From the IMG/VR virus record IMGVR_UViG_3300031576_000001, positions 248,001 through 312,000 of that record: 64,000 bases of DNA; one strand, written 5' to 3'. Shown here in pieces: positions 1,155 through 56,752 of the stretch. Under the pieces are notes generated by a model that saw only the letters and a list, made by a program, of their open reading frames with translations, searched no databases and had not been told where the DNA came from. A program made the translations under genes and the position numbers. The first letter of the stretch is position 1. Each line of letters opens with the position of its first letter.

Positions 1155-1566
1155 GGGTGACCTCTGGCAAGGGCGCAGGCTCAGGGGGCGCTTGTACCGC
1201 GGGGGCAGGCGTAGGGGGCAACGCTACCGGCGCGGGCTCTGGGGTGTTAGCCGCTTGCAGCACCTTACGAAGAGCCTCTTTGGAGGCTTTCTTGGTAGGC
1301 GTAGCTTTGACCGGAGCGGGCGGCGGGGTCTCCGCTACGGGCGTGGTCGCTGGCCCAGACTCTTCAGGGGGAGCGTGGTCCAAGACGCCCAGCGCCAGGT
1401 TACAAAGGTCGTACAGGTCAGCCGCCTTGTTACCCGCGTAACGCATAGCGTTAGGGAGCGTGACTAGGAGGCGGGCTCGGTAGTGTTGACTATGTGCCAC
1501 GTCCGCCCCGATGAGCTTTGCGGAGAGGCAGCGGTCGCGAAGGTCGAGAATCTCTTGTCTCTTCAT
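1045..1566 (-). CDS. Hypothetical protein, Pro/Ala-rich C-terminus
   Basis: ORF from MKRQEILDL; 3' end overlaps the convergent gene. Confidence 0.5.
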   Translation of the reverse strand: MKRQEILDLRDRCLSAKLIGADVAHSQHYRARLLVTLPNAMRYAGNKAADLYDLCNLALGVLDHAPPEESGPATTPVAETPPPAPVKATPTKKASKEALRKVLQAANTPEPAPVALPPTPAPAVQAPPEPAPLPEVTLTATGVAQPQEPVAELSVSAVPQDRPTPSHADSETP

Positions 1567-1636
1567 GGTGCGGGGTAACTTAGCACACCACAAGGGCTCC
1601 GCACGCTTTGGCGCTAGAAGGGCGTACCGAGAGGGT

Positions 1637-2479
1637 TAAGGGGTACTGGCTACGCTTCAGGTACCAGACCCACCTTGCGTCAAAGGGGCCAGACTGAGGG
1701 GGTACGACCACGGCGGGCTTTGCGGGTGGCTTGTTGCAAGCGCAGTCATTGTTCTGGTGGAGCCCAAAGAGCTTGACCTTGACGATGCCCACCGTGTACA
1801 GCGGTACCGTGAGGGCGAGCACACGCCCGACGTGCAAAGCTCCCATCACGTTTTGCGCGAGACCCATGGCTAAGCCATTAGCCTCTTTGCGGAGACTCCG
1901 CTCACTGGCGCCAAGGTAGGCGATCTGAGAGTGGTCCACCGTGCCAGCCTTGCCTGCCTCAAGGCTCGTTGCCCGAGGGACTACCCTCATGCTCACGTCC
2001 TGCCATCCAGACTCGCTGGCTCGCAGGTATCCCAGGTGACAGGAAGCGCAACCCGTGTCTTCGCTAGAGCGGGCGCTGTCCTGGGCACGTTCCTGCTTCC
2101 CCTCGTCGTAAGTAATACGCTCCAAAGCCGAGCTAAGCGCGGATTTGCTGGTTTCCGCCGCGATGCGTTGATTGCGCAAGGACGTGAGCCTGACCTTGGT
2201 GCCTTCAATACGAAGGTTACAGTCAGCGACGGCATTGCACTCGGTTTCCCAGTCCTTGGACAGCAACGTCACTACGCGCTCCCTCTCCGCAGCAACCCCC
2301 TTGTCATAGGCAACCCTCACGGAAGCCAGCACCCAAGAGAGAGCCTCCTCGTCGGTGTCAAAGGTGACCTTACTCTCCCCCTTGGTGGTGTCCACAAACC
2401 GATTGAAGGCGTCGGCAATTTGCGTGCGCCATTTGAGGCTGCACTCCTCGTAACCCGCTAGTTTGTCGTTGTCGCTCAT
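1637..2479 (-). CDS. Hypothetical protein (paralog of 2701..3243); ends at TTA 1639-1637
   Basis: Shares an F.xDEEAL.(W/Y)...ER motif with the neighbour; GAGG RBS and GGTGTA motif upstream; standard-code stop is at 1580. Confidence 0.6.
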
Positions 2480-2528
2480 GGTTCTGTCCTCACTTTACAC
2501 CAAAGAGGTTCTCTAGGGTAGTCTCAAA

Positions 2529-2679
2529 GAAAGAATCCCCGCGTGTGCGGGGAACACCGCCAGGCGTACCCCAAGGCTCACGTCGAGACCGGTACATCCC
2601 CGCGTGGGTGGGGAAAACTCACTCCTTGGGGCTCCTACGCGGTTTACCTCGGGTCGATCCCCGTTCACACGGGGAACAC
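2529..2679 (-). CRISPR. Mini CRISPR array with type I-E-like repeats (3 x 29 bp repeats, 2 x 32 bp spacers); no cas genes in the window
   Basis: + strand repeats: 2529-2557 GAAAGAATCCCCGCGTGTGCGGGGAACAC, 2590-2618 CGGTACATCCCCGCGTGGGTGGGGAAAAC, 2651-2679 GGGTCGATCCCCGTTCACACGGGGAACAC. Period is 61 bp. The reverse complement resembles the I-E repeat GTGTTCCCCGC..GCGGGGAT..ACCG. Confidence 0.9.
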
Positions 2680-2700
2680 TCTAAGTTGAAGGCGCAACCG

Positions 2701-3243
2701 TCAAGCAGGCTGGTCCTTACCAAACAGATCACTTTCCAAGAGGCTAGCCAGCATAGCAACCTCAGCGTCATTCCGTTCCGCCTGGACTTTCGAGTCTTTC
2801 AGCGTTGCACGGGCTTGCTTGGTGCGGGTTGCCAGCGTAGCGCTTCGGTCCTGAGCCTTGCCCCACTGAGAGGTAAGCTCGGAAAAGACACGCTCCAACA
2901 CCGCCCGCTCACCCTCTTTGCGTGCCTCGACGAGCCCACCCAAGGCGTGGTCCATGTAAGCAAGAGCCTCCTCGTCATTGGTGAAAACGACCGGGTTCTC
3001 TGTGTCATGCTTGGTAGCGAGGGCTGAGAGGCGGTCTCGCCAGTCCTGACTCGCACGATCATTGGCTCGCTTGGTTTGCTCGTCGGCATAGACAACGAGG
3101 GCGAGCAGGTGGGCTATCCAATCTAGCGCGGACTCGCGGGAGAGTAGAACGATGGGTGGTACCCCAAGCTGTTTGTTGCGTTGGTTGGCGAGGCTGGTGA
3201 TGCCCTCTAGCCAACGGTCGCGCTCGTCATCTGTCTGGCTCAT
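2701..3243 (-). CDS. Hypothetical coiled-coil protein (paralog of 1637..2479)
   Basis: VFTNDEEALAY motif; GGTGTA 10 nt upstream of ATG. Confidence 0.65.
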   Translation of the reverse strand: MSQTDDERDRWLEGITSLANQRNKQLGVPPIVLLSRESALDWIAHLLALVVYADEQTKRANDRASQDWRDRLSALATKHDTENPVVFTNDEEALAYMDHALGGLVEARKEGERAVLERVFSELTSQWGKAQDRSATLATRTKQARATLKDSKVQAERNDAEVAMLASLLESDLFGKDQPA

Positions 3244-3252
3244 AACCCCCGG

Positions 3253-3981
3253 TTACACCGATGGGGCTGCGATCTCGAAATGTTGCCAATCCTGGCGCCC
3301 AGCGAAGAACCCCCCGGAGTAGAAACCGTGCGCCTCAGCCAAGGGTACAAGGGGGTACACACAACCCCATGCTCCCAAAGGTGCCCCTTTTGACTTCAGC
3401 GGGTTCTCGCTGGCGTTTATGTCAAAGGCAGAGCCCCAACTATGTGAACTGAGGTTTACAGCGGACCCTCGGACGAAGCGGGGCACGTACAAGCCATCCC
3501 AGGACACAAGGAGGGACAGCAAGCCAGCCTGGCGCCACGCTTCAAAGAGGTCTACCAAGGGGCCGGCTACTTTACGGTGACACTGTACCTTGCCCGAGGA
3601 GGGTGCTCCCCGTACTCCCCCGATGGGCAAGAGCACGGTAACAAGGTTGTCCCGTGCCCAGGAGCCCTCGACCGTGATTGCCTCTGGGTTCCCTGGTAGC
3701 GGCGAGGCTCGGTAGGCAAACTGCCCCAAGAGGGCTACCTTGGCTGCGTAAGACAGGGGTTTCACGGTGGACACCGTAGGCGCTTCGGTCTCACGCAGCC
3801 CCTGGCTTTCGGCTTCCGCCAGCGTCTCGGCGTCCACCACCCCAGTAATCGCAAGCCCGTAAGTAGCCTGCCACTCGCGGAGCGCCTTGGTTATAGGCGC
3901 GGGCTCCGTCCTCTTAGCTAGAGAGGGCATGACGCCTACGCGGTTCAGAAAAGCCCCCATCTGGTACAGTGCTTCGTCCAT
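3253..3981 (-). CDS. M15-family peptidoglycan peptidase with N-terminal PG-binding domain
   Basis: ALREWQATYGLAITGVVD (PG-binding); SSHSWGSAFDIN and DWQHFE zinc-peptidase motifs. Confidence 0.85.
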   Translation of the reverse strand: MDEALYQMGAFLNRVGVMPSLAKRTEPAPITKALREWQATYGLAITGVVDAETLAEAESQGLRETEAPTVSTVKPLSYAAKVALLGQFAYRASPLPGNPEAITVEGSWARDNLVTVLLPIGGVRGAPSSGKVQCHRKVAGPLVDLFEAWRQAGLLSLLVSWDGLYVPRFVRGSAVNLSSHSWGSAFDINASENPLKSKGAPLGAWGCVYPLVPLAEAHGFYSGGFFAGRQDWQHFEIAAPSV

Positions 3982-4008
3982 GTAGGCGTGGGTAGCACAA
4001 GGGGCGCG

Positions 4009-4712
4009 TTAGCCCCGGCACACACGACACGGGGCTTCTGCTTCATCGTACCCCTCTTGACCCCTTGGAATACGTCCAGCCTCGAAAGCTAGACGCAGAT
4101 CCTTGAGGGCTGCTGGCCAAGTGTCCCGGTTCGGGGAGCGGAAAGTATGTCATACTTTCCGCTCGATCTCTTCACCCTGCGCGTAAATCTCAGGGTGGTC
4201 GCGCCAAAGTGCGTACCACTCGGTAAGCCTCTGACCGTAACAAAAGGCACAATCCGTGCGCTTGGGGATTTTGATACCACGGCTCGACAAGAAGCCCTTG
4301 ACTTGCGCTAGTCCCCAACCCTGCTCCCTAAGAGGGTAACGGTATGTAGCGTAGGGCCCATACAATCCTACACGTTCCTCCTCGTCGGCACGCAAACCTA
4401 CACAAAGCGTACTCCCTGGGTGGCGCAAAAGGTGAGCGATGGCCGGCTGGATCTTGATTTGCCTCGTACACCAACGCTGGCGGTGGTTGGGTAGCGCGTT
4501 GTAGGTGTCGATGAGCGGTAGCAACCTCGGCCCTTTGGGTAGCACCAGCGGTTTTTTCAACGCCTCTGTGTTGCCTCAACATGAGCCCTTAGCCCGGGTA
4601 GCTCGTTATCCGTGGCAGTGAACAATAGCTCGAAGTCCTCACCCTGCTCCGCGAGCAAGTACGCCATTGCCGTGGAGTCTTTCCCCCCAGAGAAGGCAAC
4701 GAAGGTGGTCAC
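4009..4712 (-). pseudogene. PAPS-reductase-family (PP-loop) gene, disrupted
   Basis: Starts MTTFVAFSGGKDSTAMA. Frameshift near 4565, then RWCTRQIKIQP, GLRADE, RTDCAFCY. In-frame TGA at 4152-4150 before HTFRSP. Second frameshift before the terminal CRVC. Confidence 0.7.
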
Positions 4713-7631: not shown

Positions 7632-10600
7632 TTGGCCAGGCTCGCGTCAAAAGCACTCGGGGGTTTTTACAAAACGCCCACCCACCTTGTCCCTCTCATC
7701 GCGGGCAAGATCGCCCTCCCTTCGCTGGACAGGACGGCCAGCTACAGCCTCATGGACCCTTGCGCTGGCAAGGGTGAGGCTGTCTCGCTACTCTGGTCCA
7801 CGCTGGTTGGTGGCAACACGGTGAGCGGACCCAAGGTCAGCTTGTACCTCTGTGAAATGGAGCGGGTACGCGCCGCAGAGGCTAAGCAAGCGGGCCAGTC
7901 CGTGGGAGCTAACTACCGCGCCAGCGTCTACCTCCACGGTGACGCTTTCAGGTCGAACTACACCCGGAGCGACAAAGAGGGAGTCTCTCTCCTCTACCTC
8001 AACCCTCCCTATGACACGGACCCCGTGATGGGTAGGCTAGAGGAGAGGTTCCTAGCCAGGTTCACGGGCGCGCTCTGTGTGGGCGGGGTGTTGGTCTTCC
8101 TGGTCCCCTTCTACGCGCTGGCGGCTTCCGCCCGGACCCTGGCCACGGAGTACCAAAACCTCTCGTGCTTCGCATTTCCTGAGAAAGACTTCGCGGTGTT
8201 CAAGCAAGTCGTTCTCTTCGCGGAAAAGCGCGAGGCTCCCCTCATGGCACCCGACGCGGGCACACTGGCTCAGGTTGAGTCGTGGTCTCGGGGGGAGTGC
8301 CTGGCTACGCTGGACGCTACCGGGGGCGCGGTTGTCACTGTTCCAGCGGCGGCGTCGTGGTATGGCGCGGCGTTCAAGTGGGAAATGCGTCCTGTGGACC
8401 TGTCTACAATCGCGGGCAAGGTCAAGGGTTGGTCCGCCATGGACCGCCGGGGCGTCATGGCACCCATTGCAGGCTACAACCCTCTCGGTGAGCCCTTGCT
8501 GGACCGCCATTACCCGGTAGCTGTACCCCCCAAGGCGGCTCACATTGCCACGGGGATTGCAGCGGGCGTCTTCAACGGCTGCAAGGTCACCCCTGACCGC
8601 AAAGAGGCGGTGCTACCTACCCTCCTCGTCAAGGGCGCCTTTGACCGGGAGTGGAAGAAGGTTGAGGAGAAGAAAGACAAGAACGGCAACGTCAAGGGGG
8701 TTATCGAGGTACAGCAGCCCCAGCTAAAGGTCACGGTCCTTGACCTCACGACCCACCAATTCGTCACCCTCAAGGCGGGCGAGGAGGGTTCTTGGGAGCA
8801 GGGTTTGCAGGGTATGACCACGGGTGACTTGCTCAGGGAATACGGCGGGGGGCTCATGGGTGCCTTGCTCAAGCAATGCCCCGTCATGCACGATCCTAGC
8901 CGGGAGGGTGACAACTTCACGCTGCCCACCATGGCGCGCGAGCTTTACCCTGCGCAAGCCAGCGCGGCGCGTGCTTGCGTTACCCTCCTCGGGGGGTTGG
9001 GCGTTCCTTACCGCGCTCGCAAGGGCAAGGCTGCTTTTCTCCTGGGGGAGGTGGGTTCAGGGAAATCTATTTGCGCGCTTACCACGATCAAGGCGATTGG
9101 CGCCAAGCGCCCCCTGATTCTCTGCCCGCCTCACTTGCTGGACTCGTGGAAAGAGCAAGTCAAGCTCTCTTGCCCTGATGTTACGGTGGCAGTACTCACG
9201 GACGTGGAGTCTGTTCAAGCGTGGGCTAAGGACACCACCCCCGGGATTGCGCTTCTGTCCAGGGAAACCGCCAAGCTCTCTCATGGGTACGAGGGTCTTA
9301 CCGGGACGTGCCCGGGTTGTGGGGCGGTCATCCCAACCTCTGCGGAAGATAACGTCAAGAAACGCTTGTGCTGCACGGCGCGCACCGTGAAACCCAGGGA
9401 AGCCGTCACCCATGAGGCACACAAGCTAGCGCTCATCCTGTCCAAGTACGTGCCAGAAAACGAGACAGTCAACCAGATCCTCGGCGGGCGCGTCTTGCAA
9501 CGCTACCTCCTGGGTAAGAAAGAGAAGCCCGCGGACAAAGCCGGTTTGCACCAAGAGGGGGGGCTGCTTAGCCTGTTCGTCTGGCTAGGCGCCAGGCTCG
9601 ACGACGCCAAATACCACCGTCCCTTTGCGCTGGTGGCTTCCTGGGTCAAGGACCGTGATGCGCTGGGTAAGGCTATCTTCTGGGCTTACCTGGAGAGCTA
9701 CGCTCGCGACAGCGGAAGCTACGGGCATGAGGCTGATCTGCGCGGTATCCTGCGGGGCTGCTTGGTTTTTGTTCCGGGCTACCAAGCGATTGCCTCTGAG
9801 CTAGCTACACACTGCCCCGAGTCGCGTGGGTACGGCGCTCTAATCTCGGTGTGGACGACTTGGCTTGAGGAGGTGGAGTCCCAAGAAAACGGAGAGGGCG
9901 ATACGGGATACAGGCGCTCGGAATGGCAGAAAACCAGCGAGGGCTGGGTCTACAACAAGATCCTGCTTGGCACGGCGGCTTGCCTGACCACCACGCTCGA
10001 AATCCTGGCTCAGGCTGGCAAGTGGTCAATCAAGGAAGGGTGCGGGGAGCGTCTGTACCAGGCGGCCGCCTCACCTAAGAGGTATCCTCTGGCTACCCTG
10101 ATCTCTCGTAAGTACCCTCGCGCGTTTGACTTTCTGATCTGTGATGAGGCGCACGAAAATAACTCGGAGGTGGCTGCCCAAGCCAAAGCGGCGCACCGTC
10201 TCATGGGTTTGGGCCACCCGACGCTGTGTCTCACGGGTAGTGTGATGAATGGTTACGCCCGTAGCCTCTTCGCTAACCTCTGGCAAGTCAACCCTTCCTT
10301 TCGTGCGGAGTTTGACCGGGACGAGGCTCAGGCGTTCGTTGACCGGTACGGCTACCGCAAGCGGCTTGTCGAGGATCGCGACAAAGACACCAAAGAGGTT
10401 GTGGAGTACGGCTCCATGTCCGACCGGGTTGAGTGCCGGGAGAAGATGCTGGGCGAGACCCCCGGTGTGCTCCCCCTCTTGGTGCTGAAGCACTTGCTTA
10501 GGTGCAGCGTGACGTTGCACAAGGCGGACCTCCAGGTGCATATACCCCCCTGCAAGGAAGAGCGAGTCATGGTCCAGCCCTCCCCGGAGCAAGCCAGCAA

Positions 10601-11438
10601 CCTCCTCTACTTGCAGGGTCGGCTGATTGACCAGATCAGGGCGGATATGTTCGACCCGGGGAGGGCTGGCAAGCTGTGGGGGCAGCTTAGCGAGCTTCCC
10701 TCCTACCTGGACCGCGCCACGCGGGACGTGGGTAAGAGCCCCGGGCGCCAGACCTACGACATAACCTACCCGGAGTCCATGGATTACGAGCTAGTGGCTA
10801 GCGTTGACGCGCTCCCCACGTCCACCGTGCTCCCCAAGGAAACCTGGCTCCTTGATACGGTCGAGAAAGAGCTAGCCGAAGGGCGTAACGTGATGGTCTT
10901 TGCCTGGCACGTTGACCTCTTGCCCCGGCTGCAACGGCTCTTGCAGGACAAGCTAGGCGAGGTTGTGCCTGTGCTCAACCCGGACAAGGTGACCACGGGC
11001 AAGCGCCAGGCGTGGATTGAGAAGGAAGTCACCAAGAAGAACCGCAGGGTGCTCATCGTCAACCCCGTTGCGGTTCAGACGGGTCTCAATAGCCTCACGC
11101 ATTTCTCGACCGTGGTTTGGTTTGAGAACCCCGCTTGTAACCCCGTCGTCTACCGCCAGGCTAACGGGCGGATCGACCGTATCGGTCAAACCAAGGCTAC
11201 CCGGGTTCTCTTCCCCGTGTACGACATGACCCTTTGCAGCGCTCTCCACAAGCTCTTGCTTCACAAGGTGGCGGTCTCGCTGGCTACGGACGGCTTGGAT
11301 AACGAGGCTACCCTGGCAGCGGCGGGTCTGGGCGAGTCTACGGGGCTCACGGGTCTCTCGGTCGGTAAGCAGCTTTATGACATCATCACCAACAAGGTCA
11401 GGCTGCGCGGGCAGGACGAGAAATACGACTTGTGCTAA
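7632..11438 (+). CDS. DNA methyltransferase-like (DUF6094-type) domain fused to an SNF2/SF2 helicase
   Basis: GFYKTP, MDPCAGKG (SAM motif I), LNPPY (amino-MTase motif IV), GEVGSGKS (Walker A), ICDEAH, LTGS, QTGLN, QANGRIDRIGQ. Confidence 0.85.
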   Translation: MARLASKALGGFYKTPTHLVPLIAGKIALPSLDRTASYSLMDPCAGKGEAVSLLWSTLVGGNTVSGPKVSLYLCEMERVRAAEAKQAGQSVGANYRASVYLHGDAFRSNYTRSDKEGVSLLYLNPPYDTDPVMGRLEERFLARFTGALCVGGVLVFLVPFYALAASARTLATEYQNLSCFAFPEKDFAVFKQVVLFAEKREAPLMAPDAGTLAQVESWSRGECLATLDATGGAVVTVPAAASWYGAAFKWEMRPVDLSTIAGKVKGWSAMDRRGVMAPIAGYNPLGEPLLDRHYPVAVPPKAAHIATGIAAGVFNGCKVTPDRKEAVLPTLLVKGAFDREWKKVEEKKDKNGNVKGVIEVQQPQLKVTVLDLTTHQFVTLKAGEEGSWEQGLQGMTTGDLLREYGGGLMGALLKQCPVMHDPSREGDNFTLPTMARELYPAQASAARACVTLLGGLGVPYRARKGKAAFLLGEVGSGKSICALTTIKAIGAKRPLILCPPHLLDSWKEQVKLSCPDVTVAVLTDVESVQAWAKDTTPGIALLSRETAKLSHGYEGLTGTCPGCGAVIPTSAEDNVKKRLCCTARTVKPREAVTHEAHKLALILSKYVPENETVNQILGGRVLQRYLLGKKEKPADKAGLHQEGGLLSLFVWLGARLDDAKYHRPFALVASWVKDRDALGKAIFWAYLESYARDSGSYGHEADLRGILRGCLVFVPGYQAIASELATHCPESRGYGALISVWTTWLEEVESQENGEGDTGYRRSEWQKTSEGWVYNKILLGTAACLTTTLEILAQAGKWSIKEGCGERLYQAAASPKRYPLATLISRKYPRAFDFLICDEAHENNSEVAAQAKAAHRLMGLGHPTLCLTGSVMNGYARSLFANLWQVNPSFRAEFDRDEAQAFVDRYGYRKRLVEDRDKDTKEVVEYGSMSDRVECREKMLGETPGVLPLLVLKHLLRCSVTLHKADLQVHIPPCKEERVMVQPSPEQASNLLYLQGRLIDQIRADMFDPGRAGKLWGQLSELPSYLDRATRDVGKSPGRQTYDITYPESMDYELVASVDALPTSTVLPKETWLLDTVEKELAEGRNVMVFAWHVDLLPRLQRLLQDKLGEVVPVLNPDKVTTGKRQAWIEKEVTKKNRRVLIVNPVAVQTGLNSLTHFSTVVWFENPACNPVVYRQANGRIDRIGQTKATRVLFPVYDMTLCSALHKLLLHKVAVSLATDGLDNEATLAAAGLGESTGLTGLSVGKQLYDIITNKVRLRGQDEKYDLC

Positions 11439-22624: not shown

Positions 22625-23455
22625 ATGGCTAGTTACGAAAACCTAGCAGGTACAACCGAGACCACATTTCAAATTGGTCTGGACCGTCCACAAGTAAAGA
22701 GTACGTCCACAGGCGAGCTAGAAGCTAGAGACGCTACAGACTCGACTTACGCCAGGTTTCGCGTAGGCGCCCCTGTAGGTCCAAACGACGCGATTACCCG
22801 GTCCTATGCAGACACGCTGAGCAAGCCGATCATTGTTTCTGCTCAGTTTGACGGCAACAATGCGCTTCCTGCCAACACCGGAACCCCCAGCTACAAGGTA
22901 GTCACAACCACGGGTGCTTTTGCCAGCATTGGGGACGTGATCTACGATGACGGATCGGGAGTGGGCACTACCACGGTGCTTACGGCAATAGAGGGTCGTG
23001 TACTCGCTATTACGGACGCCCTCTCTGGTGGTACGGTCAGCCTTGACCCGGACAGCATTTACATCTGGGACGCTGACGGTTCTGCCTATGTAAAGATCGG
23101 GGACATTGGCTCCGTAACAGGGGCAAACAGGGTCATCCGATACACCATTACCAACGCTGCGACGCAGGACAGCGTGACTACGATTCCAGCAAGCGCGATT
23201 GTGGGACGCTGTGAGGTGAAGATAACGACCCCCTATTCCGGGGGAGCGTCTATCTCGGTGGGGCGAGCTGGTTCTCTGGCACTCATTATGCCCCCCACGG
23301 GGAACACCCCACAGGGGGCTAGCGGTAACATCTACCGTAGGTTCCAAGACACCGACTGGGGTGGCTCAGCTTTGGTGGTGCGGACTACGATCACAGGTGC
23401 TCCGGCTGCGGGTGCTGGCGTGATTATTGTCCACTACATGACACCCAACGCTTTA
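22625..23455 (+). CDS. Putative virion structural protein; ends at TTA 23453-23455
   Basis: NLAGT.E..FQIG N-terminus shared with the next gene. Confidence 0.6.
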
Positions 23456-47776: not shown

Positions 47777-49102
47777 TCAACCTACCACAAAGAGACACCA
47801 CCGACCACCCTGGTACTGCTCCGTAAACGTGTGCGTGACACCTACCACGGCTATCCTGGGGGGCAATCGCGCGTCCGTATGAACGTACACCCAAGAGCGC
47901 ATTCCCTTGAGCCGATGCCTGCCCACAGACTTCCACTCCCGGGCTGCACCCGCAACCACCCCCCCCTGCTTCTCAAAACTGGGCGCCAAAGCCGTCCAGT
48001 CCACAGGGTTGAAGACTACATGACCCCCAGCAGCCCCCGTCAAGTTGATAACCTCAGAGACCGTATGCGTCCGCGTCATCAGGTCCAGCCCCCCTGACGT
48101 GGGTGACAAGAGACCCACAGCCTCTCGGTACGACGCCTCAAGAGACTGCAAAGCCTCTCGGGCTACGCCGGCTTGCTGTACAACCTCCTCCCGCGTCATG
48201 AGCCCCACGTCGCGCCACCACGGACGAGGAGCATCCACGCTAGGCGCCACACCCAGCGAAACCCAGCCCCTAGAGACCCCACAGGCCAGGGAGGTAGGCT
48301 CAGCTTTGACTACGGAACACTCAGAAGTCGGCTCAGCGTGAGGCACACCCTTGAGGAGGTCCATGTGGCGGCGCAAGTCCTCGACCAAAAACACGTCCTC
48401 ATCTTGCCCACCCCTGCAGATTGACGGACCCAGGACCGTAACACGGACCAAAGGCGTGCCGTCTCGGTACACACCAAGACAAACCACCCGAAAACCATCG
48501 GGAATATCCCCGTCCCGCCACATACCCGAAAACGTCTCGGATGATGAGTGTGACTGCACACCACACCCCTCCCTCACCACGTAAACCTCCCCAACACGAG
48601 GAAAAAGAAGCACCGTCTCACGCAAGAAGTGCTCCCCCTCGAAAAACACGGCGGTCGCCGCCCCACCCACCAGCACCATCACGCCAAGCAGACCCCCTCC
48701 CTCCGCAACCTCAAGAGCCATCACCACCCCCCCGGGGTACGGCTTCGTCCTACGTAGCACGCCCACCGTCGCAAGAAGCCTCTCCCGCAAAGAGACAACC
48801 TCCTCTTTCGGGCTGCCTTGCATAGGCTCATCGCCCACAGGGACCGTCAGGTGCAAAAAGTCCTCCCGCAACACAACGTCGTACTCCTCATCACCGCCAA
48901 TCCTGCAGACCCGGAGATGCACCACGTCCACCCCCGTTTTGAGAGTGCCCACCCCCGCCACCGTGAACCGAGTAGACTCAGACCCCCACGAGCACTGCCT
49001 AGGAGTCTCAGGGGCGCTCCTCAACACGCCCACAACTACCCCGTCAGCACCTAGCCTCAACCGGTACACGCCGCCTAGCACCACCTTAGCCTTCTCGCTC
49101 AT
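47777..49102 (-). CDS. Repeat-module hypothetical protein (paralog of 46008)
   Basis: Shared DGTPLV.V motif and C-terminal domain. Confidence 0.6.
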   Translation of the reverse strand: MSEKAKVVLGGVYRLRLGADGVVVGVLRSAPETPRQCSWGSESTRFTVAGVGTLKTGVDVVHLRVCRIGGDEEYDVVLREDFLHLTVPVGDEPMQGSPKEEVVSLRERLLATVGVLRRTKPYPGGVVMALEVAEGGGLLGVMVLVGGAATAVFFEGEHFLRETVLLFPRVGEVYVVREGCGVQSHSSSETFSGMWRDGDIPDGFRVVCLGVYRDGTPLVRVTVLGPSICRGGQDEDVFLVEDLRRHMDLLKGVPHAEPTSECSVVKAEPTSLACGVSRGWVSLGVAPSVDAPRPWWRDVGLMTREEVVQQAGVAREALQSLEASYREAVGLLSPTSGGLDLMTRTHTVSEVINLTGAAGGHVVFNPVDWTALAPSFEKQGGVVAGAAREWKSVGRHRLKGMRSWVYVHTDARLPPRIAVVGVTHTFTEQYQGGRWCLFVVG

Positions 49103-49166
49103 ACCCCCCACCTTACACCAAGACCGAGAAGCCCCACGCCCCCGTAAGCACAAAGAAGCCTACCCC

Positions 49167-49934
49167 CTACGGAGAGGAGACCCCCAACAGCCACCGGGGC
49201 GTCCCTTCACCCAGCAACCTGGAGTCCCTTAGCTCACCCCTGGCAAGCTCAAGATACCGCGGAGACACTACGCCAGCAAGCGTAGCACGCTCACTCAAAC
49301 ATGGCGTGACACTCTCTCGGGTACCCTTCAAGAGAAAGTGCTCAAGTTGGGAGCGAGCCGAAGACACCTCACTCATCGAACGAAACCACGTACCACGTAC
49401 ACGCTCTACCCGATGTTTCCTCTCCGCACACGCCTTCTGGTACCGACTCACCGCCCACCCACACGCACCTACACCACCCACCAAGAACACAAGAGACAAC
49501 CACCACACCGAAACCCACCACCCCACCAATGGCGCAACCCCCACCCCAAACAAGCCCGCCACGAACACCAACCACGAAAGCCCACCAAACCCCACAGGAG
49601 ACGCCTCCAAGTCAGCCAACTCTAGCTCACACGCCCTCCCCACCAATGCCAACGCTACGCACTCCCTCTCTACGTGCAAAACAACCCGGGTAGACTCCCC
49701 CTCCGTCAGCACCGAAGCCTGTAGCCCACGCGCAAACTCGACTCGGAGACCCCTCTCCTCTCGCTTACGCCACTCCTCATGCTTCTTCGCAATAACCTCC
49801 TCACCCCTCTCCAGAAGCCACCTCTTCCACAACCGCCTCCTCAAAGAAGCATACCCCTCCAGGCTCAACCCGTAACCCCTCGCCTCCCTCCGCTCCTTGA
49901 CCGTCAACGCTGACACCTTCAACTTGACCGACAT
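49167..49934 (-). CDS. Membrane protein
   Basis: Two hydrophobic segments; GGTGTA upstream. Confidence 0.5.
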   Translation of the reverse strand: MSVKLKVSALTVKERREARGYGLSLEGYASLRRRLWKRWLLERGEEVIAKKHEEWRKREERGLRVEFARGLQASVLTEGESTRVVLHVERECVALALVGRACELELADLEASPVGFGGLSWLVFVAGLFGVGVAPLVGWWVSVWWLSLVFLVGGVGACGWAVSRYQKACAERKHRVERVRGTWFRSMSEVSSARSQLEHFLLKGTRESVTPCLSERATLAGVVSPRYLELARGELRDSRLLGEGTPRWLLGVSSP

Positions 49935-50050
49935 AACCAGCCCCTTACACCCTCCCCCCAAGAGAAAAGGCTGAGCCAAAAAAGCACCCTCCCTAACCTA
50001 CGCCTCACCTCAGCCCCAGCCCCCAGCCTAAAGGGTGTATACCCACACCC

Positions 50051-50712: not shown

Positions 50713-51747
50713 TCAGAGCTTCTTGCAGCCTGCGACGTACCACTGGCGAGCCGCGTCGGATACGGCTTTCTGAGCCGTTTTCGCGTCTAGCCCGGAACAA
50801 GCTAGCTCAGCGTTGCACTCCTTGAGCACGTCCGCCGTCAACCAAGCCAGAAAGACACCGGTTTTCTTGGGGTCGAAGCTACCCCCACAGACCACAGAAA
50901 GCCCCTGCTCCAGGCGGGCGCCCGTGACGACCAAAGAGGCGAAATCGGCGGCGTTTCGGGTTACCGTGGCGCTGGCTTGGGCTGGCGCCGTCCTGGTGAC
51001 CGCGCAAGCGTGGTGCTTCTCGCCCTTGGCTTTGAAGCAGAGGTTGGAAAAGCGCTTATAATCGCTGCCCAGAGAGGGCTCGTCAGCCTCAGCCCCCGAG
51101 GGCACGGGGTAGAAGACCAGCCCTTCGCCCGTGCCCTCTACGCCAAAGGTGTTGCGTACCCAGGGGTCGCACTCCTCGACAGCGAGGACGTGCTGGTTGA
51201 TCCGGTCTAGCGTGGGCTGTAGAGCTTCGTCGGAAGCCGCCCAGTTCACCATGTAGGCTTCGCCGTCCTGGTACCAGGGGAGCACGTAGCAGCCGGGGAT
51301 GACCTGGGTCAGCCGGGAGAGGGTCTCTGGATCGTCGAGGAAGTCGATAACCCCAGGGTGGTCAACGAGGCGGGCAGCAAAGACGGCAAAGACCTTCGCT
51401 TTGAGGAGGTTGACGGCGACGCCCTTCTGAATGCCGGGTCCACACCACTCCCCGAAGAGGACCAGGGCGCCCGCCAGAGGAGCCAGCTTGGCTATCGTTG
51501 CCTGGCGCTCGTAGACCCACCTAGCAAAGCCCGCATTGTCCGAGTCCAGGGAGAGCACGCTGGTGCGGGACAGGGCAGTTACCCCCTCTTGGCTGATCTT
51601 TATGCCGGCGTTGGTGCCATGGAGCTTCACCTTGGCGCGGTAGCTCACGGTTGACGCCCCCTGGTCAAGAAGCTCCGGGTAGAGGGTCAGCTTGCGCCTG
51701 GCATTGTGAAAGTTGTCAATCTCGGTCCACTTGACGTGCTCTGTCAT
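50713..51747 (-). CDS. RNA ligase, Rnl2 family
   Basis: KLHGTNAG (motif I), SR, FGEWCGPGIQKG, GEGLV, FKAK. Confidence 0.88.
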   Translation of the reverse strand: MTEHVKWTEIDNFHNARRKLTLYPELLDQGASTVSYRAKVKLHGTNAGIKISQEGVTALSRTSVLSLDSDNAGFARWVYERQATIAKLAPLAGALVLFGEWCGPGIQKGVAVNLLKAKVFAVFAARLVDHPGVIDFLDDPETLSRLTQVIPGCYVLPWYQDGEAYMVNWAASDEALQPTLDRINQHVLAVEECDPWVRNTFGVEGTGEGLVFYPVPSGAEADEPSLGSDYKRFSNLCFKAKGEKHHACAVTRTAPAQASATVTRNAADFASLVVTGARLEQGLSVVCGGSFDPKKTGVFLAWLTADVLKECNAELACSGLDAKTAQKAVSDAARQWYVAGCKKL

Positions 51748-51806
51748 GCCCGAGAGGGTACACCGCCCGGCGCTCAACCTCTCAGGGGGACCACCACCCC
51801 CTTTCA

Positions 51807-51849
51807 AAAACCCTCACGCTGATACGGCAAACCCAAAGAAATTGAAAGC
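51807..51849 (+). repeat. Left arm of 43-bp inverted repeat
   Basis: AAAACCCTCACGCTGATACGGCAAACCCAAAGAAATTGAAAGC; 42/43 match to the reverse complement of 52746-52788. Confidence 0.9.
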
Positions 51850-52503
51850 CAGGAGACCCTCTCGTCCGTGACGCGATGTGTCATGATGACCTCGGGGCAC
51901 TCGGTACACAAAAGGCACGTTTGGGGTCGTGTTTTGTGCCTCGTGCCACCCCCCGGATTTACCGATGTTTTTGTGGTCCAGCCCCTAGGGGGAGACTCCA
52001 TGCGGAGAGGGGTCCAAATTATGGAACCTCCATACACTTGATCGGCCTTTTTGCCAGGGGTCAGGAGTGACACCCCCTCTCTGCTCAATCGTGCTACGCC
52101 TAAGTGTGCTCAACTGGAGTCCTCGCCGGGGTCCAATTCGGATGTATTTCAAGAAACCCCGATCAATAGAGGGGTGTCATGTTTGACCTGAGAGGCGTGT
52201 CTAGGTAGCACGCATGACCCCCTACGCGCACAATCGTGCCACGGTATGCCCTACGTGTAGGGTCATGTGTGGTCACGGTTGGCAGGGGGGGTGCGTCAAT
52301 TTCTGAAGCTAGGAGGGGCTCATGCTGTGTGTGGAAGCTCCCACCTTGGGGGGCTTCTCTGCGCCTACGCTGGCGAGCCCCCTACCCCCTTGTGATTTGC
52401 GAATGCAGGAGGCGCCTCTTTGAGGCAAGGCGTAGCCCCAATTCATTTGGAAATTCGCGCCATTACCCTAGCCGGGTCTGCCCAGGGGCGGGAAGGGGTG
52501 AGT

Positions 52504-52682
52504 TCAGTACACACACAAATGAGGATCGGCTAGGAGCACCGGTATAGGATTTGAATTTTTTACCCGGTGCCCTGTCTCAGTACACACACAAATGAGGATC
52601 GGCTAGGAGCACCGGTATAGGATTTGAATTTTTTACCCGGTGCCCTGTCTCAGTACACACACAAATGAGGATCGGCTAGGAG
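52504..52682 (+). repeat. 73-bp tandem repeat x2.45 with internal hairpin
   Basis: TCAGTACACACACAAATGAGGATCGGCTAGGAG starts at 52504, 52577 and 52650; each full unit has GCACCGG..CCGGTGC around an AT-rich core. Confidence 0.9.
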
Positions 52683-52745
52683 GGTGGGGTGTGTTTTGAA
52701 TTTTGGGTTGGAGGCTGTTTTCGATTACAGTGTGGCTGTAGCTGC

Positions 52746-52788
52746 GCTTTCAATTTCTTTGGGTTTGCCGTATCAGTGTGAGGGTTTT
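52746..52788 (-). repeat. Right arm of 43-bp inverted repeat
   Basis: See 51807-51849. Confidence 0.9.
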
Positions 52789-52938
52789 CGTGAGGGGGTT
52801 TCGGGTGAGACGGGGGGTCTCTATTTTCTACCCCGTTTTCTTTTTGGGTGGGTGTGGGGGTGGCTTCCTGAATTTTGGGTGGCAGAGAACGTAGCCTCGG
52901 GTGTTTTTTCTGCGAGGAGTGGTGTACCTAGTGTGCCC

Positions 52939-53766
52939 ATGGGATGTTTTCCTCTAGCGGGTCAAGACGAGTCCTTGAGCGGTCCTTACGTACCGTGTGT
53001 GTACGTGGCTTCCAGGCTACAGTACGCTTCCATGTGGCGATCTTACCGAGAGGGTTGGGCTACGTCGGTAAGGGTGACCTCACGGTGGCTCGACGTAGTG
53101 GGCGAGGTGTCTGACAAGGGTGGGTTGTGGCAGGGCCTTATGGCGGACATAGTGAGGTCGGACGTTTTGCTAGCCTACGGGGAGGCTGGCGAGGTGTGGC
53201 AGGGTGCTCTTGTCGAGGTGGGCGCCGCCCTGGCTCTAGGTAAGCCAGTGCTTGTTGTGGGTGCAGGGGTGAACAGCTTTTGGAGTCACCCGTTGGTTAC
53301 GCGCTTCGATACGGTAGAGGCTGCCATGGCTTCGCTTGGGGTACAGCGTCCCCTCTCACCTGCGCCTATTACGGAGTCTGTGAGGGTGATGGTGATGTCC
53401 GAGGTACGGCACGTTGGCATGTGGAGGGAGTGCGTAGCTTCTCAGCCTCCAGGGGTGAGCATAGTCTCTAGGTGGCTGGATGATGTGGCGGTGGGGGACA
53501 CGGTACGGATGTGGCTTGAGTACCTGGAGGACACGAAGCGCGCTCAAGCGGTCATTCTCTATGGTGGCTTTGATGATGACGCGCTATGGGAGCGCCAGCT
53601 AGTCAGGGTAGCGGTTCACGTAGCGCTGCTAGCCAAGAAGCCTGTCTACGTGGTGGGTTCTGGCTCGGGCTCAGAAAATCTAGGCATAGGGGCTTCGCCT
53701 CTTGTGCGTCTGTGTGCTTCGGTCGAGGAGGCTTTTCGGTTGGCTGCCGTTCTGTCTTCCCCTTAA
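52939..53766 (+). CDS. Tandem nucleoside 2-deoxyribosyltransferase-like domains
   Basis: VYVAS..VTSRWL..DI..SDVL..GALVEVGAALALGKPV, repeated in degenerate form. Confidence 0.7.
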   Translation: MGCFPLAGQDESLSGPYVPCVYVASRLQYASMWRSYREGWATSVRVTSRWLDVVGEVSDKGGLWQGLMADIVRSDVLLAYGEAGEVWQGALVEVGAALALGKPVLVVGAGVNSFWSHPLVTRFDTVEAAMASLGVQRPLSPAPITESVRVMVMSEVRHVGMWRECVASQPPGVSIVSRWLDDVAVGDTVRMWLEYLEDTKRAQAVILYGGFDDDALWERQLVRVAVHVALLAKKPVYVVGSGSGSENLGIGASPLVRLCASVEEAFRLAAVLSSP

Positions 53767-53775
53767 AAGGAAGAA

Positions 53776-53804
53776 CCCCGTAGCCCTTGGGGGTGCCTAC
53801 GGGG
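53776..53804. terminator. Hairpin between convergent genes
   Basis: CCCCGTAG...CTACGGGG; intergenic only if the - strand gene ends at TTA. Confidence 0.55.
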
Positions 53805-53834
53805 CGCTCGATACCTCTTTGCGTAGAGGCTTGG

Positions 53835-54461
53835 TAAGCGAACGATGCTCCGAGAGCGGGGTCTCGTGGGTGTGGTCAGGGTGTATTTGTCACCGCCGCC
53901 TGTGGGGGGGCGGGGTGCGTTAGTATTGGTAGCCCTGTTGATGAGCGCCTGTAGAGCCGCTGTCGAGAGCACGTTACTTTTGGAGACGGGGCTGAGTGTG
54001 GTAGGCGTAGCCTTGTATAGGTCGGGGTTATTGAGGAACCCGTGACCGTCGAGGTCGCCGTCGAGACCAAAGAGGAAGTTGAGTGCAGTCGCCGCGAGAG
54101 ATCCGCTACCCGTGAGGTTATTGCCGGTACCGAACGTGCTCACCAAATTCAGTGGGCTCGTTAGCGTACCGCTCCCTGTTGTGGACCCTGTGTAAGCTAG
54201 GGCAAGATTAAGCCCTGTACCGTTGGCGAAGAGGGTGCCTATACCCGTGGCCGCGCCATTTGCGACGGCGACTAGGTTTAGGTTGACCGCTGTAACTGTG
54301 CCCACGCCGGTCGTATTGCCTATGTAGGCGAGGGCAAGGTTAAGGGGGGCTGACAGAGAACCAGCGCCCGTGGTGCTACCGGCGTAGGTAAGGTCTAGGT
54401 TCAAGAAAGCAGAGAGGTCACCATTACCATCTAGATTACCGTCAAGAAGTTGGTCAGCCAT
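53835..54461 (-). CDS. Gly/Thr-rich repeat virion protein; ends at TTA 53837-53835
   Basis: Repeated L.L.Y.G.TTG.G.L motif. Confidence 0.6.
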
Positions 54462-56338: not shown

Positions 56339-56752
56339 ATGAAAGAGATCGCAATTTCCCTGTCGCGCGCCGAGCTACTCGCCGCGAAAGCCTGCTCGGC
56401 GGGCATGACGTGGTTCGATACGTGGCCCCGCCTCTACGACGGTGACCAAGAGATTGTCGTGCTGTGGTCGCCCCTGGCGATGGTGTGGTCCTTGGCGAAC
56501 CCGAATAGCAACCAGCGCAGCATGGCCCGTTGGCTTATCGACAACGGGCTACTGCCCATGTGGTCGCTGAGCGGAGCCTACTTGAGCGGAGCCTACTTGA
56601 GCGGAGCCTACTTGAGCGGAGCCGACTTGAGCGGAGCCTACTTGAGCAGAGCCGACTTGAGCAGAGCCGACTTGAGCGGAGCCTACTACCCCGGGGGCGC
56701 CTTGCCGGGGGGGTGGGTGCGCAATAAGGACGGTTTCCTTGTTAGGGGCTAG
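56339..56752 (+). CDS. Pentapeptide repeat protein
   Basis: (A[YD]LS[GR])n; 15-bp DNA repeats at about 56568-56686. Confidence 0.85.
   Translation: MKEIAISLSRAELLAAKACSAGMTWFDTWPRLYDGDQEIVVLWSPLAMVWSLANPNSNQRSMARWLIDNGLLPMWSLSGAYLSGAYLSGAYLSGADLSGAYLSRADLSRADLSGAYYPGGALPGGWVRNKDGFLVRG

What the first reader, a model, noticed from the sequence alone, without database searches (positions are those of the whole stretch)
2529..2679. Cas-less phage mini CRISPR array (type I-E) in which every repeat differs
Seen: three 29-bp repeats and two 32-bp spacers, period 61, co-oriented with the flanking - strand genes. The repeat at 2529 is degenerate at its 3' end, as trailer repeats usually are. The outer repeats differ by a compensatory stem change (TCCCCGC/GCGGGGA versus TCCCCGT/ACGGGGA) that keeps the hairpin. 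Known: phage mini-arrays can borrow host Cascade against competitors, and repeat mimics can act as RNA anti-CRISPRs. Inference: this array is loaded by host type I-E machinery; divergent repeats may suit several host Cas6 variants or limit recombinational loss.
Basis: partly seen in the sequence, partly recalled or inferred. Interest (0 to 1): 0.72.

Follow-up and report, generated by a model that had tools for sequence, protein, structure and literature searches.

The report
Orphan type I-E CRISPR mini-array, huge phage
A two-spacer type I-E CRISPR array with three non-identical repeats really does sit between two genes of a huge cave phage that has no cas genes in its assembled 322 kb; distant relatives of this phage carry their own I-E Cas3 and Cascade genes plus dozens of similar variable-repeat mini-arrays, so this is a new example of a known phenomenon and "borrows host Cascade" is only one of several live readings.

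Summary
On the - strand, 2679-2529 reads R1-S1-R2-S2-R3: 29-nt repeats, 32-nt spacers, period 61. These are the only three I-E-like repeats in the 322,633-bp virus contig, which comes from a cave metagenome and is estimated 68% complete.

- **Repeats:** R3's first 23 nt match the commonest natural I-E repeat core in my sample. R1's core occurs nowhere else in the collections searched. R2 carries an unpaired A.C in its stem.
- **No cas genes:** bacterial I-E Cas profiles and the Cas proteins of a related phage find nothing in the contig.
- **Relatives:** a complete 437-kb phage (G001; 81 shared ORFs, long synteny) encodes Cas3, Cas7e, Cas6e, Cas5e and a Cse1-Cse2 fusion. It also has about 63 repeats (54 distinct) in about 17 dispersed mini-arrays. 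Its cas island lies between two genes that are adjacent in our phage.
- **Meaning of repeat variation:** it is typical of this clade, even where there is a single phage Cas6e. That fits protection against recombination better than fitting several host Cas6 variants.
- **Untested or negative:** no spacer target, no close relative and no RNA data were found.

Best reading (about 0.42): a working crRNA mini-array loaded by Cascade supplied in trans, most likely by the host. The rivals are a decaying relic, an anti-CRISPR decoy or regulator, and cas genes in the unassembled third. I class it as a new member of a known kind.

The parts
2651..2679 (-). Repeat R1, the first repeat in transcription order. 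It has a 7-bp stem with a GUGA loop; stem pair 11-16 is U-A. Its 3' part, AUCGACCC, would be the 5' handle of crRNA 1.
   Evidence: 31.7 bits; -13.7 kcal/mol. The 23-nt core was found nowhere else: not in IMG/VR, only on the own contig in JGI metagenomes, and not in the capped genome sample.
2619..2650 (-). Spacer S1, 32 nt.
   Evidence: No match was found in the own genome (up to 9 mismatches), INPHARED phages, IMG/VR, plasmids, 120 host I-E loci, relatives G001-G003 or 401 Pseudomonadota genomes.
2590..2618 (-). Repeat R2. It differs from R3 at core positions 3, 10 and 12. Position 10 gives an A.C mismatch in the stem on the - strand RNA (it would be G.U on the + strand). Its 3' part, AUGUACCG, would be the 5' handle of crRNA 2.
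   Evidence: 28.3 bits; the only unpaired cell among 392; -8.6 kcal/mol.
2558..2589 (-). Spacer S2, 32 nt.
   Evidence: Only chance 17-mers in the phage collection. No match in IMG/VR, plasmids, host loci, relatives or 401 Pseudomonadota genomes.
2529..2557 (-). Repeat R3, the trailer. Its first 23 nt equal the commonest natural I-E core in the sample, and its last 6 nt are degenerate.
   Evidence: -14.3 kcal/mol.
2526..2553 (-). Terminator-like element: the R3 hairpin followed by TTCTTTCTTT.
   Evidence: This is a consensus scan only, and the number of such sites in the region is not above the shuffle expectation.
2680..2700 (-). A 21-nt stretch between the upstream stop codon and R1. It ends in TTAGA, as many natural I-E leaders do, but has no IHF-type site and no room for a normal leader.
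   Evidence: natural leaders end AAGA, AAGT or TAGA and carry an ATCAANNNNTTR-like site; no significant similarity to G001 leaders.
2701..3243 (-). Upstream 180-aa ORF, an orphan of unknown function. The array would be co-transcribed with it.
   Evidence: no family; only itself among 5.8 billion proteins.
1580..2479 (-). Downstream 299-aa ORF, an orphan and a weak paralog of the 180-aa ORF. Its ATG lies 49 nt after R3 and is preceded by GAGGA.
   Evidence: (E 2e-4 between the two ORFs).

Best explanation
This is a genuine type I-E crRNA mini-array. Related huge phages carry arrays of the same kind in large numbers. It has no leader of its own. It would be transcribed from the - strand by read-through from the upstream 180-aa gene and end at the R3 hairpin and its U-tract.

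A Cas6e-type endonuclease would cut after each hairpin and release two 61-nt crRNAs:
- 5' handle AUCGACCC, S1, R2 hairpin
- 5' handle AUGUACCG, S2, R3 hairpin

These would assemble with Cascade and guide it to targets that are still unknown. The contig has no cas genes, and the site where its relatives keep theirs is empty. The proteins must therefore come in trans, most probably from a type I-E host. Without a leader, an IHF site or Cas1-Cas2, the array is fixed and cannot acquire spacers.

The non-identical repeats keep everything Cas6e and Cascade would need while removing the long identical stretches through which recombination would delete spacers.

Shown: the anatomy, the family resemblance, the absence of cas genes in the contig, and the design shared across the clade. 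Inferred: transcription, processing, loading, and the source of the Cas proteins.
For: - **Geometry:** exact 29/32/61 I-E spacing and orientation.
- **Conserved elements:** the TTCCCC and GGGGA stem arms are invariant in all three repeats. Variation sits in the loop and the top two stem pairs (positions 10-17), in repeat position 3 and in the 3' tails.
- **Handles:** 5'-handle-like tails are retained in R1 and R2, the two repeats that would supply a handle, and lost only in R3, which would not.
- **Natural counterpart:** R3's core is identical to a widespread natural I-E repeat that lies next to full cas operons.
- **Clade design:** in relatives G001 and G002/G003 the same design recurs next to a phage-encoded Cas3, Cas7e, Cas6e, Cas5e and Cse1-Cse2. 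The shared features are short arrays between co-oriented genes, many distinct repeats, and a terminal repeat degenerate at its 3' end just before the next gene's ribosome-binding site. In G001, 371 of 371 stem cells are paired, with GC-to-AU covariation.
- **No cas here:** none in 322 kb, and the syntenic cas site is empty.
- **Age argument (inference):** the phages are so diverged (about 25-77% amino-acid identity) that an unselected 151-bp element inherited from their common ancestor should no longer be recognisable. The array is therefore either recent or maintained.
- **Precedent:** huge phages that carry arrays without interference genes were proposed to use host Cas proteins (PMC7162821).
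Against: - No target was found for either spacer in any collection searched.
- R2's stem has an A.C mismatch. It is the only unpaired cell among 56 distinct repeats of the two phages (Fisher p about 0.05), and it may impair processing between the two spacers.
- R1's core and handle match no known host repeat.
- No promoter-like site was found.
- The host is unknown, so a host I-E system is assumed rather than shown.
- There are no RNA data and no close relative in which to test conservation.
- The contig is about 68% complete.
Confidence: 0.42

Rival explanations
1. Decaying relic. An ancestor carried an I-E interference module and many mini-arrays, as G001 and G002 do. This lineage lost the cas island and most arrays, and the two-spacer array is a leftover that no longer does anything, except perhaps that the R3 hairpin acts as a terminator.
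For: - The relatives have their cas island at a conserved site that is empty here.
- R2's uncompensated stem mismatch is unique in the clade.
- R1's handle differs from every natural and phage consensus.
- There are no targets, and no leader similarity to the relatives' arrays.
- It is the only array in 322 kb.
Against: - There are no indels across 151 bp.
- Two of the three hairpins are perfect, one through a compensatory change.
- Handle-like tails are kept exactly where they would be needed.
- Neutral DNA should not survive the divergence separating these phages. A recent loss of cas cannot be excluded, however.
Confidence: 0.25
2. Anti-CRISPR RNA. The transcript acts as a repeat mimic (Racr-like), soaking up Cas6e and Cas7 of a host or rival-phage I-E system. 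Alternatively it acts as a Cracr-type regulatory crRNA-like array whose spacers partly match a cas promoter and shut the system down.
For: - It is a Cas-less viral location carrying divergent repeat-like units.
- Viral I-E Racrs work experimentally (PMC10651486).
- Two- and three-spacer viral I-E Cracr arrays have been described, one with an imperfect third repeat (bioRxiv 10.1101/2024.10.29.618823).
- Failing to find full-length targets is what a regulatory guide, which needs only about 9-20 matched bases, would give.
- Another IMG/VR contig carries a solitary repeat close to R2.
Against: - The spacers are full-length at exactly 32 nt, whereas the tested I-E Cracr spacers were 21-24 nt.
- S1 and S2 have no above-chance PAM-proximal match in 120 host I-E loci or in the cas islands of G001 and G002.
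- No acr or aca gene is recognisable nearby.
- The host cas locus is unknown, so the key test could not be run.
Confidence: 0.15
3. The array is not Cas-less. The phage's own I-E interference genes lie in the unassembled part of the genome, and the array is one of several served by them, as in G001.
For: - CheckV estimates 68% completeness, and the contig has no terminal repeats.
- Both related phages that carry such arrays encode Cas3 and Cascade.
- Dispersed arrays far from the cas genes are normal in G001, for example at 110 kb and 405-408 kb.
Against: - The conserved position of the cas island in G001 and G002 is present in our contig and is empty.
- There is no other array or solitary repeat anywhere in 322 kb, against about 17 in G001.
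- The repeat tails differ from both relatives' consensus.
Confidence: 0.12
4. Not CRISPR-related: three chance GC-rich hairpins or ordinary terminators in an intergenic gap.
For: The R3 hairpin with its T-tract fits a terminator pattern. The whole gap folds more stably than shuffled versions on both strands.
Against: The exact 61-nt period, the 23-nt identity of R3 to a natural I-E repeat, the weight-matrix margin of more than 13 bits over any other site in 322 kb, and homologous arrays in related phages.
Confidence: 0.02

Closest known systems
CRISPR arrays of huge phages that lack adaptation and/or interference genes (Al-Shayeb et al. 2020, PMC7162821)
   Same: A huge-phage genome from a metagenome, a compact array, and no Cas1-Cas2. 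In that paper, phages without interference genes whose repeats resemble their hosts' were proposed to use host Cas proteins. Our nearest GenBank hit, LR745208.1, is an uncultured 485-kb phage with 43% identity over a 1268-aa protein.
   Different: Ours has only two spacers, all three repeats differ, no host repeats are available for comparison and no target is known. LR745208.1 itself has no I-E array.
   Same: The phages are related (81 shared ORFs, synteny). They carry I-E type repeats with the same invariant stem, many repeat variants within one genome, short arrays between co-oriented genes, and a terminal repeat degenerate at its 3' end.
   Different: The relatives encode Cas3, Cas7e, Cas6e, Cas5e and a Cse1-Cse2 fusion, have about 17 arrays and have conserved leaders. 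Ours has one array, no cas genes, no conserved leader, different handle sequences and one unpaired stem position.
Viral mini-arrays used in virus-virus competition (Faure et al. 2019 and Medvedeva et al. 2019, as summarised in PMC11656645)
   Same: One or two spacers, no cas genes in the virus, and presumed use of host Cas proteins.
   Different: Those arrays have repeats identical to the host's, and most of their spacers hit related viruses. Here the repeats are non-identical, R1 matches nothing known, and no related virus is hit.
Cracr arrays: viral crRNA-like regulatory RNAs that repress cas promoters (bioRxiv 10.1101/2024.10.29.618823), and host CreR mini-arrays (bioRxiv 10.1101/2023.03.03.530964)
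   Same: Two- or three-spacer type I-E arrays in viruses, with degenerate repeat-like units, outside any cas locus. One tested array also had a defective repeat.
   Different: Their defining feature, a partial PAM-proximal match to a cas promoter or to the CreR/CreA spacer, was not found. Our spacers are full-length at 32 nt rather than 21-24 nt.
RNA anti-CRISPRs (Racr, solitary repeat units; PMC10651486)
   Same: Repeat mimicry by a virus without cas genes; I-E examples were shown to inhibit interference.
   Different: Racrs are single repeats placed behind a promoter. Ours is a regularly spaced array with canonical spacers and no detectable promoter.

Membership tests
Type I-E CRISPR array | 29-nt repeat with the I-E consensus (GTGTTCCCCG...CGGGGAT + handle), folding into a 7-bp stem with a 4-nt loop | tested here: met
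   R1 and R3 are perfect; R2 has one A.C mismatch.
Type I-E CRISPR array | Unique spacers of 32-33 nt, giving a period of 61 | tested here: met
   two different 32-nt spacers with spacing 61 and 61.
Type I-E CRISPR array | (Near-)identical repeats along the array | tested here: not met
   core identity to R3 is 87% for R2 and 74% for R1. Host arrays in the sample are homogeneous.
Type I-E CRISPR array | AT-rich leader with an IHF-type site upstream of the first repeat | tested here: not met
   There are only 21 nt between the stop codon and R1. It ends in TTAGA but has no ATCAANNNNTTR-like site at the usual place.
Type I-E CRISPR array | Associated cas genes (Cas3, Cse1, Cse2, Cas7e, Cas5e, Cas6e, Cas1, Cas2) | tested here: not met
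   No hits in 322 kb with Pfam models, blastp of ORFs from 120 I-E loci, profiles built from them or the phage Cas proteins of G001. The contig is about 68% complete.
Type I-E CRISPR array | Transcription and Cas6e processing into 61-nt crRNAs | not testable with these tools
   Only one DNA run holds the sequence and no RNA run was listed.
Viral competition mini-array (Faure/Medvedeva type) | Repeats identical to those of the host's CRISPR system | tested here: inconclusive
   The host is unknown. R3's core equals a widespread natural repeat. The cores of R1 and R2 were found in no bacterial array.
Viral competition mini-array (Faure/Medvedeva type) | Spacers match related viruses | tested here: not met
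   phage collections; relatives G001-G003. The IMG/VR searches required exact matches outside every sixth position, so diverged targets would be missed.
Cracr array / CreR-like regulatory mini-array | At least 9 PAM-proximal bases matching a cas promoter, CreT or the host CreR spacer | tested here: inconclusive
   The best proximal runs in 823 kb of host I-E loci do not exceed those of shuffled spacers. The true host locus is not available.
Racr (solitary repeat unit) | A single repeat-like unit behind a promoter, without spacers | tested here: not met
   Three units with canonical spacers and no promoter-like site.
Phage-encoded I-E system of the G001/G002 clade | Phage-borne Cas3 and Cascade genes next to the homologs of our genome ORFs 153205-155403 and 155575-156429 | tested here: not met
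   Those two ORFs are adjacent in our phage, separated by a 171-nt gap that contains no repeats.
Phage-encoded I-E system of the G001/G002 clade | Mini-arrays of non-identical I-E repeats embedded between co-oriented genes, with a degenerate terminal repeat | tested here: met
   compared.

The most novel reading that the evidence does not exclude
In this clade of huge phages the mini-arrays form a distinct architecture: guide cassettes with deliberately diversified repeats, built into the untranslated regions between genes. Cas6e cutting would then both release crRNAs and set the ends of the neighbouring mRNAs. Under this reading the lone Cas-less copy in our phage is a free-riding cassette, made to be loaded by whatever I-E Cascade is in the cell, either the host's or that of a co-infecting Cas-bearing relative.
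Probability: 0.12. Interest if true: 0.75.

Novelty: new member of a known kind. Interest (0 to 1): 0.45.

Why it matters
Cas-less arrays in phages are the clearest candidates for viruses using someone else's CRISPR machinery, and very few have been tested. This case comes with a natural comparison set:

- a complete relative carrying its own I-E Cas3 and Cascade and about 60 repeats of 54 different sequences;
- a second relative of the same kind;
- this phage, which has one array, no cas genes and an empty cas site.

Together they could show how much repeat variation Cas6e and Cascade tolerate. They could also show whether repeat diversification protects arrays from recombination, and whether an orphan array still works once the phage's own cas genes are gone. 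On its own the array is an ordinary addition to a known class. The relatives' architecture is the more unusual thing found here.

Tried and rejected
- **Close relatives.** Megablast and blastn of 1500-4000 against 50,697 phage records found nothing. The 299-aa flank has no relative in IMG/VR. Both flanking proteins are alone among 5.8 billion proteins. Conservation of the locus therefore could not be tested.
- **Distant relatives of the M15 peptidase** (L001-L011) carry no I-E repeats. LR745208.1 shares the 273-aa and 1268-aa genes but has no I-E array and none of the array's flanking genes.
- **Rfam.** Only a chance-level hit (anti-hemB, E 2.6).
- **Spacer targets.** None in the own genome, INPHARED phages, IMG/VR, plasmids, 120 host I-E loci, G001-G003 or 401 Pseudomonadota genomes. 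Partial 12-13-nt matches of S2 inside G001 cas3 and G002 cas7e are at chance level.
- **Host prediction.** 1548 spacers from the fetched host arrays do not hit the phage. G001's Cas7e is only about 29-31% identical to bacterial Cas7e, so it points to no taxon.
- **S1-S2 complementarity.** I noticed an 8+5 bp pairing and considered a structured RNA or two guides against one site. I rejected it: 5% of shuffles and 6.7% of natural neighbouring spacer pairs pair as well.
- **Second array.** A candidate at 52504 is a plain 73-bp tandem repeat.
- **Alternative genetic code** (prompted by the tRNA with anticodon CTA). Rejected: ORFs under the standard code already cover 87-100% of each full 20-kb bin.
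- **Leader homology** to G001 leaders is not significant.
- **Flanking proteins.** The protein-atlas searches were uninformative.
- **Pfam cas searches.** The control genomes did not ring for E. coli CasE and CasC. I therefore did not rely on these searches and built my own profiles.

Full report
**Where the window comes from.** The window is bases 248001-312000 of a 322,633-bp IMG/VR virus record (linear, CheckV completeness 68%). GC content is about 60%. Only one public DNA run holds it, from a cave metagenome. Logan's independent assembly of that run reproduces 1500-4500 with no differences. The genome is a huge phage: it has 38 tRNA genes, lysis-type genes next to the finding, and its nearest GenBank match is an uncultured 485-kb phage.

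Read on the - strand, 2679-2529 is R1 (29 nt), S1 (32), R2 (29), S2 (32), R3 (29), with a period of exactly 61. This is the canonical orientation of type I-E repeats (GTGTTCCCCG, loop, CGGGGAT, then a 6-nt tail). It is also the orientation of both flanking ORFs.
- A regex over the whole contig finds only these three hairpins of this kind.
- A weight matrix from 30 natural I-E repeats scores them 31.7, 28.3 and 23.3 bits, against 10.4 for the next best site.
- R3 is degenerate only in its last six bases.

- R2 has an uncompensated A.C at stem pair 10-17, which shortens its predicted hairpin to 5 bp (-8.6 against about -14 kcal/mol).
- The R3 hairpin is followed by TTCTTTCTTT and looks like an intrinsic terminator.
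- R1 begins 21 nt after the stop codon of the upstream gene. There is no room for a leader of the kind natural I-E arrays have (an IHF-like site, ending in AAGA, AAGT or TAGA), although the 21 nt do end in TTAGA.

**Comparison with natural I-E repeats.** A degenerate pattern covering R1 and R3 hit at least 120 loci in bacterial genomes.
- R3's 23-nt core is the commonest core among these loci, found in 23 where it is the dominant repeat. The hosts are mostly Alpha-, Beta- and Gammaproteobacteria but include other phyla, and the usual tail is GAACCG.
- These arrays lie beside complete I-E operons.
- R1's core was found nowhere else: not in that (capped) sample, not in 2.9 million IMG/VR contigs, and in 241 million JGI metagenome records only on the phage's own contig.
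- R3's exact core is also absent from every other IMG/VR contig.

The array therefore belongs to the I-E repeat family but is not a fresh copy of any sampled host array.

**No cas genes in the contig.** Pfam searches for Cas6e, Cas7e and Cas1 found nothing, but their control genomes were unconvincing, so I made my own test.
- ORFs from the 120 host loci (3,777 of them) gave no blastp hit to a Cas protein in the phage. The only recurrent hits were translations running through the arrays themselves.
- Profiles built from 9-35 bacterial Cse1, Cse2, Cas7e, Cas5e, Cas6e and Cas1 sequences gave no hit at E <= 10. The Cas5e, Cas6e and Cas7e profiles do detect the phage versions in relatives.
- The relatives' own Cas3, Cas7e, Cas6e, Cas5e and Cse1-Cse2 find nothing in our contig at E <= 1.

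**The relatives change the picture.** A last IMG/VR scan with the degenerate pattern returned 18 loci. Several are unrelated viral contigs with one-spacer I-E mini-arrays. Three of the loci lie in one complete 437,490-bp phage, G001, which has direct terminal repeats.

G001 is a distant but clear relative of our phage: 81 ORFs are shared at 25-77% identity, in long syntenic blocks. It carries about 63 I-E-type repeats in about 17 dispersed clusters, all on one strand. Its island at 13.6-22.4 kb encodes Cas3 (HD plus helicase), Cas7e, Cas6e, Cas5e and a Cse1-Cse2 fusion, with mini-arrays between the genes, and no Cas1.

Two fragments from another sample, G002 and G003, have the same design. In these phages:
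- 54 of the 63 G001 repeats are distinct;
- the variation sits in the loop and the two top stem pairs and is always compensated;
- arrays sit between co-oriented genes;
- the last repeat of many arrays is degenerate at its 3' end and directly followed by a ribosome-binding site and ATG.

Across 56 distinct repeats from G001 and our phage, 99.7% of stem cells pair. Pair 10-17 is G-C in 40, A-U in 14 and U-A in 1. The single exception is our R2.

So "every repeat differs" is a trait of this clade, and it occurs with a single phage Cas6e. That argues against the idea that the variants serve several host Cas6 enzymes. It fits avoidance of recombination between repeats, though that is my inference.

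**Is our phage really Cas-less?** In both G001 and G002 the cas island follows the homolog of our genome ORF 153205-155403. In G001 it ends before the homolog of our ORF 155575-156429. In our phage these two ORFs are neighbours, separated by 171 nt with no repeat. The conserved cas site is thus present and empty, and there is no other array or solitary repeat in 322 kb. This favours a genuine orphan. The missing third of the genome and the absence of terminal repeats still leave room for cas genes elsewhere. The array itself lies in a stretch (genome 237-273 kb) with no G001 counterpart, and its two flanking genes are orphans.

**What it targets is unknown.** Neither spacer matches anything searched:
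- the phage itself (up to 9 mismatches);
- INPHARED phages;
- IMG/VR (every sixth base free);
- plasmids;
- 823 kb of host I-E loci, including partial PAM-proximal matches;
- G001-G003;
- 401 Pseudomonadota genomes.

In the other direction, spacers of the relatives and of 1548 host-array units do not hit our phage. The pairing I noticed between S1 and S2 is not significant. The host could not be inferred: the repeats are too widespread, and the phage Cas proteins are only about 30% identical to bacterial ones.

**Mechanism and rivals.**
- **Best reading, 0.42.** A fixed two-guide cassette, co-transcribed with the upstream gene and ended by the R3 hairpin and U-tract. A Cas6e would cut it into two 61-nt crRNAs that load into a Cascade supplied in trans, most likely by a type I-E host. 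The support is anatomical: exact geometry, the invariant stem arms (TTCCCC, GGGGA), handles kept only where they are needed, a compensated stem change, and the same design in relatives that do have the proteins.
- **Relic, 0.25.** A remnant left after loss of the cas island. This is supported by R2's unique mismatch, R1's odd handle, the lack of targets and the empty cas site. Against it, the element is intact despite the large divergence among these phages.
- **Anti-CRISPR RNA, 0.15.** A decoy like the Racrs (PMC10651486) or a cas-promoter-directed Cracr array (bioRxiv 10.1101/2024.10.29.618823). The full-length 32-nt spacers and the lack of any promoter match argue against it. The decisive comparison needs the host's cas locus.
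- **Own cas genes in the unassembled part, 0.12.**
- **Chance or plain terminators, 0.02.** Effectively excluded.

**Comparison with the literature.**
- Huge phages with compact arrays that lack adaptation genes, and often interference genes too, have been described and proposed to use host Cas proteins (PMC7162821).
- Viral mini-arrays with host-identical repeats target related viruses (PMC11656645).
- Solitary repeats act as RNA anti-CRISPRs (PMC10651486).
- Viral two- and three-spacer I-E arrays can repress cas promoters (bioRxiv 10.1101/2024.10.29.618823).
- Host mini-arrays with a degraded distal repeat regulate cas8 (bioRxiv 10.1101/2023.03.03.530964).

Our element shares the general class with all of these but meets the defining test of none of the specialised ones. 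I file it as a new member of the known kind "Cas-less viral CRISPR mini-array".

**Verdict.** The finding itself is of moderate interest (0.45). The most unusual thing seen is in the relatives: an I-E interference module interleaved with many mini-arrays of diversified repeats.

Noticed in passing
G001 = IMGVR_UViG_3300021978_000001 (loci L162-L184), especially 13.2-31.2 kb, 110.5 kb, 123-128 kb and 405-408.7 kb: This complete 437-kb relative encodes Cas3, Cas7e, Cas6e, Cas5e and a Cse1-Cse2 fusion but no Cas1. Mini-arrays sit between the cas genes and in front of other genes. It has about 63 repeats, 54 of them distinct, and two conserved leader types (...ACTGAACATTTGAAGA| and ...GTGACAAGATGTCTCAGA|). 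Two spacers in different arrays (near 25.9 kb and 28.9 kb) are variants of one sequence.
   Followed up: partly
G001 23017-23094 (locus L157) and L149 4566-4664: Some viral I-E arrays contain 20-nt spacers (period 49) beside normal 32-nt ones. In L149 the two short spacers resemble each other (both start TCTGTG). Short guides of this kind recall regulatory crRNA-like RNAs.
   Followed up: no
G002/G003 = IMGVR_UViG_3300012271_000005 and _000928 (L185-L198): Two fragments of about 125 kb from one sample, related to our phage, also carry Cas5e, Cas6e, Cas7e and a Cse2-like ORF plus several dispersed mini-arrays. There are two repeat classes (GTGTTCCCC...GATGTCCCG and CCCTTCCCC...GATGTTCCC), and one leader type is shared with G001.
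   Followed up: partly
L132 3904-3926 (IMGVR_UViG_3300037067_002067): A solitary I-E repeat (GTGTTCCCCGCCCACGCGGGGATGAATCA), close to our R2, sits in an AT-rich intergenic gap of an unrelated 36.6-kb viral contig. It is a candidate RNA anti-CRISPR.
   Followed up: partly
L140, L145, L151, L152 (four IMG/VR contigs); L147 and L150 (two contigs): The same one-spacer I-E mini-array, with identical spacer and leader, recurs in four different viral contigs, and another recurs in two. Such cassettes are therefore conserved within some phage groups.
   Followed up: no
window 59803-59877 (-): A tRNA with anticodon CTA (amber-suppressor type; ARAGORN labels it Pyl) lies far from the 38-tRNA cluster at genome 21-31 kb. 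ORFs under the standard code already cover 87-100% of each full 20-kb bin, so nothing indicates a recoded genome.
   Followed up: partly
window 52504-52722: A 73-bp tandem repeat: two perfect copies and a third that keeps only the first 33 bases. It starts upstream of, and runs about 40 nt into, a 360-aa + strand ORF (52684-53766, with a weak sub-threshold Pfam hit to nucleoside deoxyribosyltransferase). The unit contains an inverted repeat (CACCGG...CCGGTG). It is not a CRISPR array.
   Followed up: partly
window 56568-56687: A tandem repeat of a 15-bp unit (TGAGCGGAGCCTACT), 8 copies, 94% matches.
   Followed up: no
window 48001-50000 and 52001-54000: Strong strand-composition skews (GC skew -0.37 with AT skew +0.30, then GC skew +0.21 with AT skew -0.22). 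The first overlaps - strand ORFs of 458 and 270 aa with no Pfam match. An RNA-ligase-domain ORF lies at 50713-51807 (-).
   Followed up: partly
window 1580-2479 (-) and 2701-3243 (-): The two genes flanking the array are weak paralogs of each other (29% identity over 116 aa, E 2e-4). Neither has any homolog among 5.8 billion proteins. Both appear mostly helical in low-confidence models.
   Followed up: partly
window 7632-11438 (+): A 1268-aa fusion of a DUF6094-type methyltransferase region with an SNF2/helicase. It is 43% identical over its whole length to a protein of the 485-kb uncultured phage LR745208.1, and the preceding 273-aa gene is conserved there too.
   Followed up: partly
window 2590-2618: On the + strand the R2 mismatch would be a G.U wobble, so all three hairpins are perfect in + strand RNA (-11.7 to -14.3 kcal/mol). 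In the canonical - strand RNA one hairpin is weakened. I have no explanation, and no + strand gene or promoter is evident.
   Followed up: no
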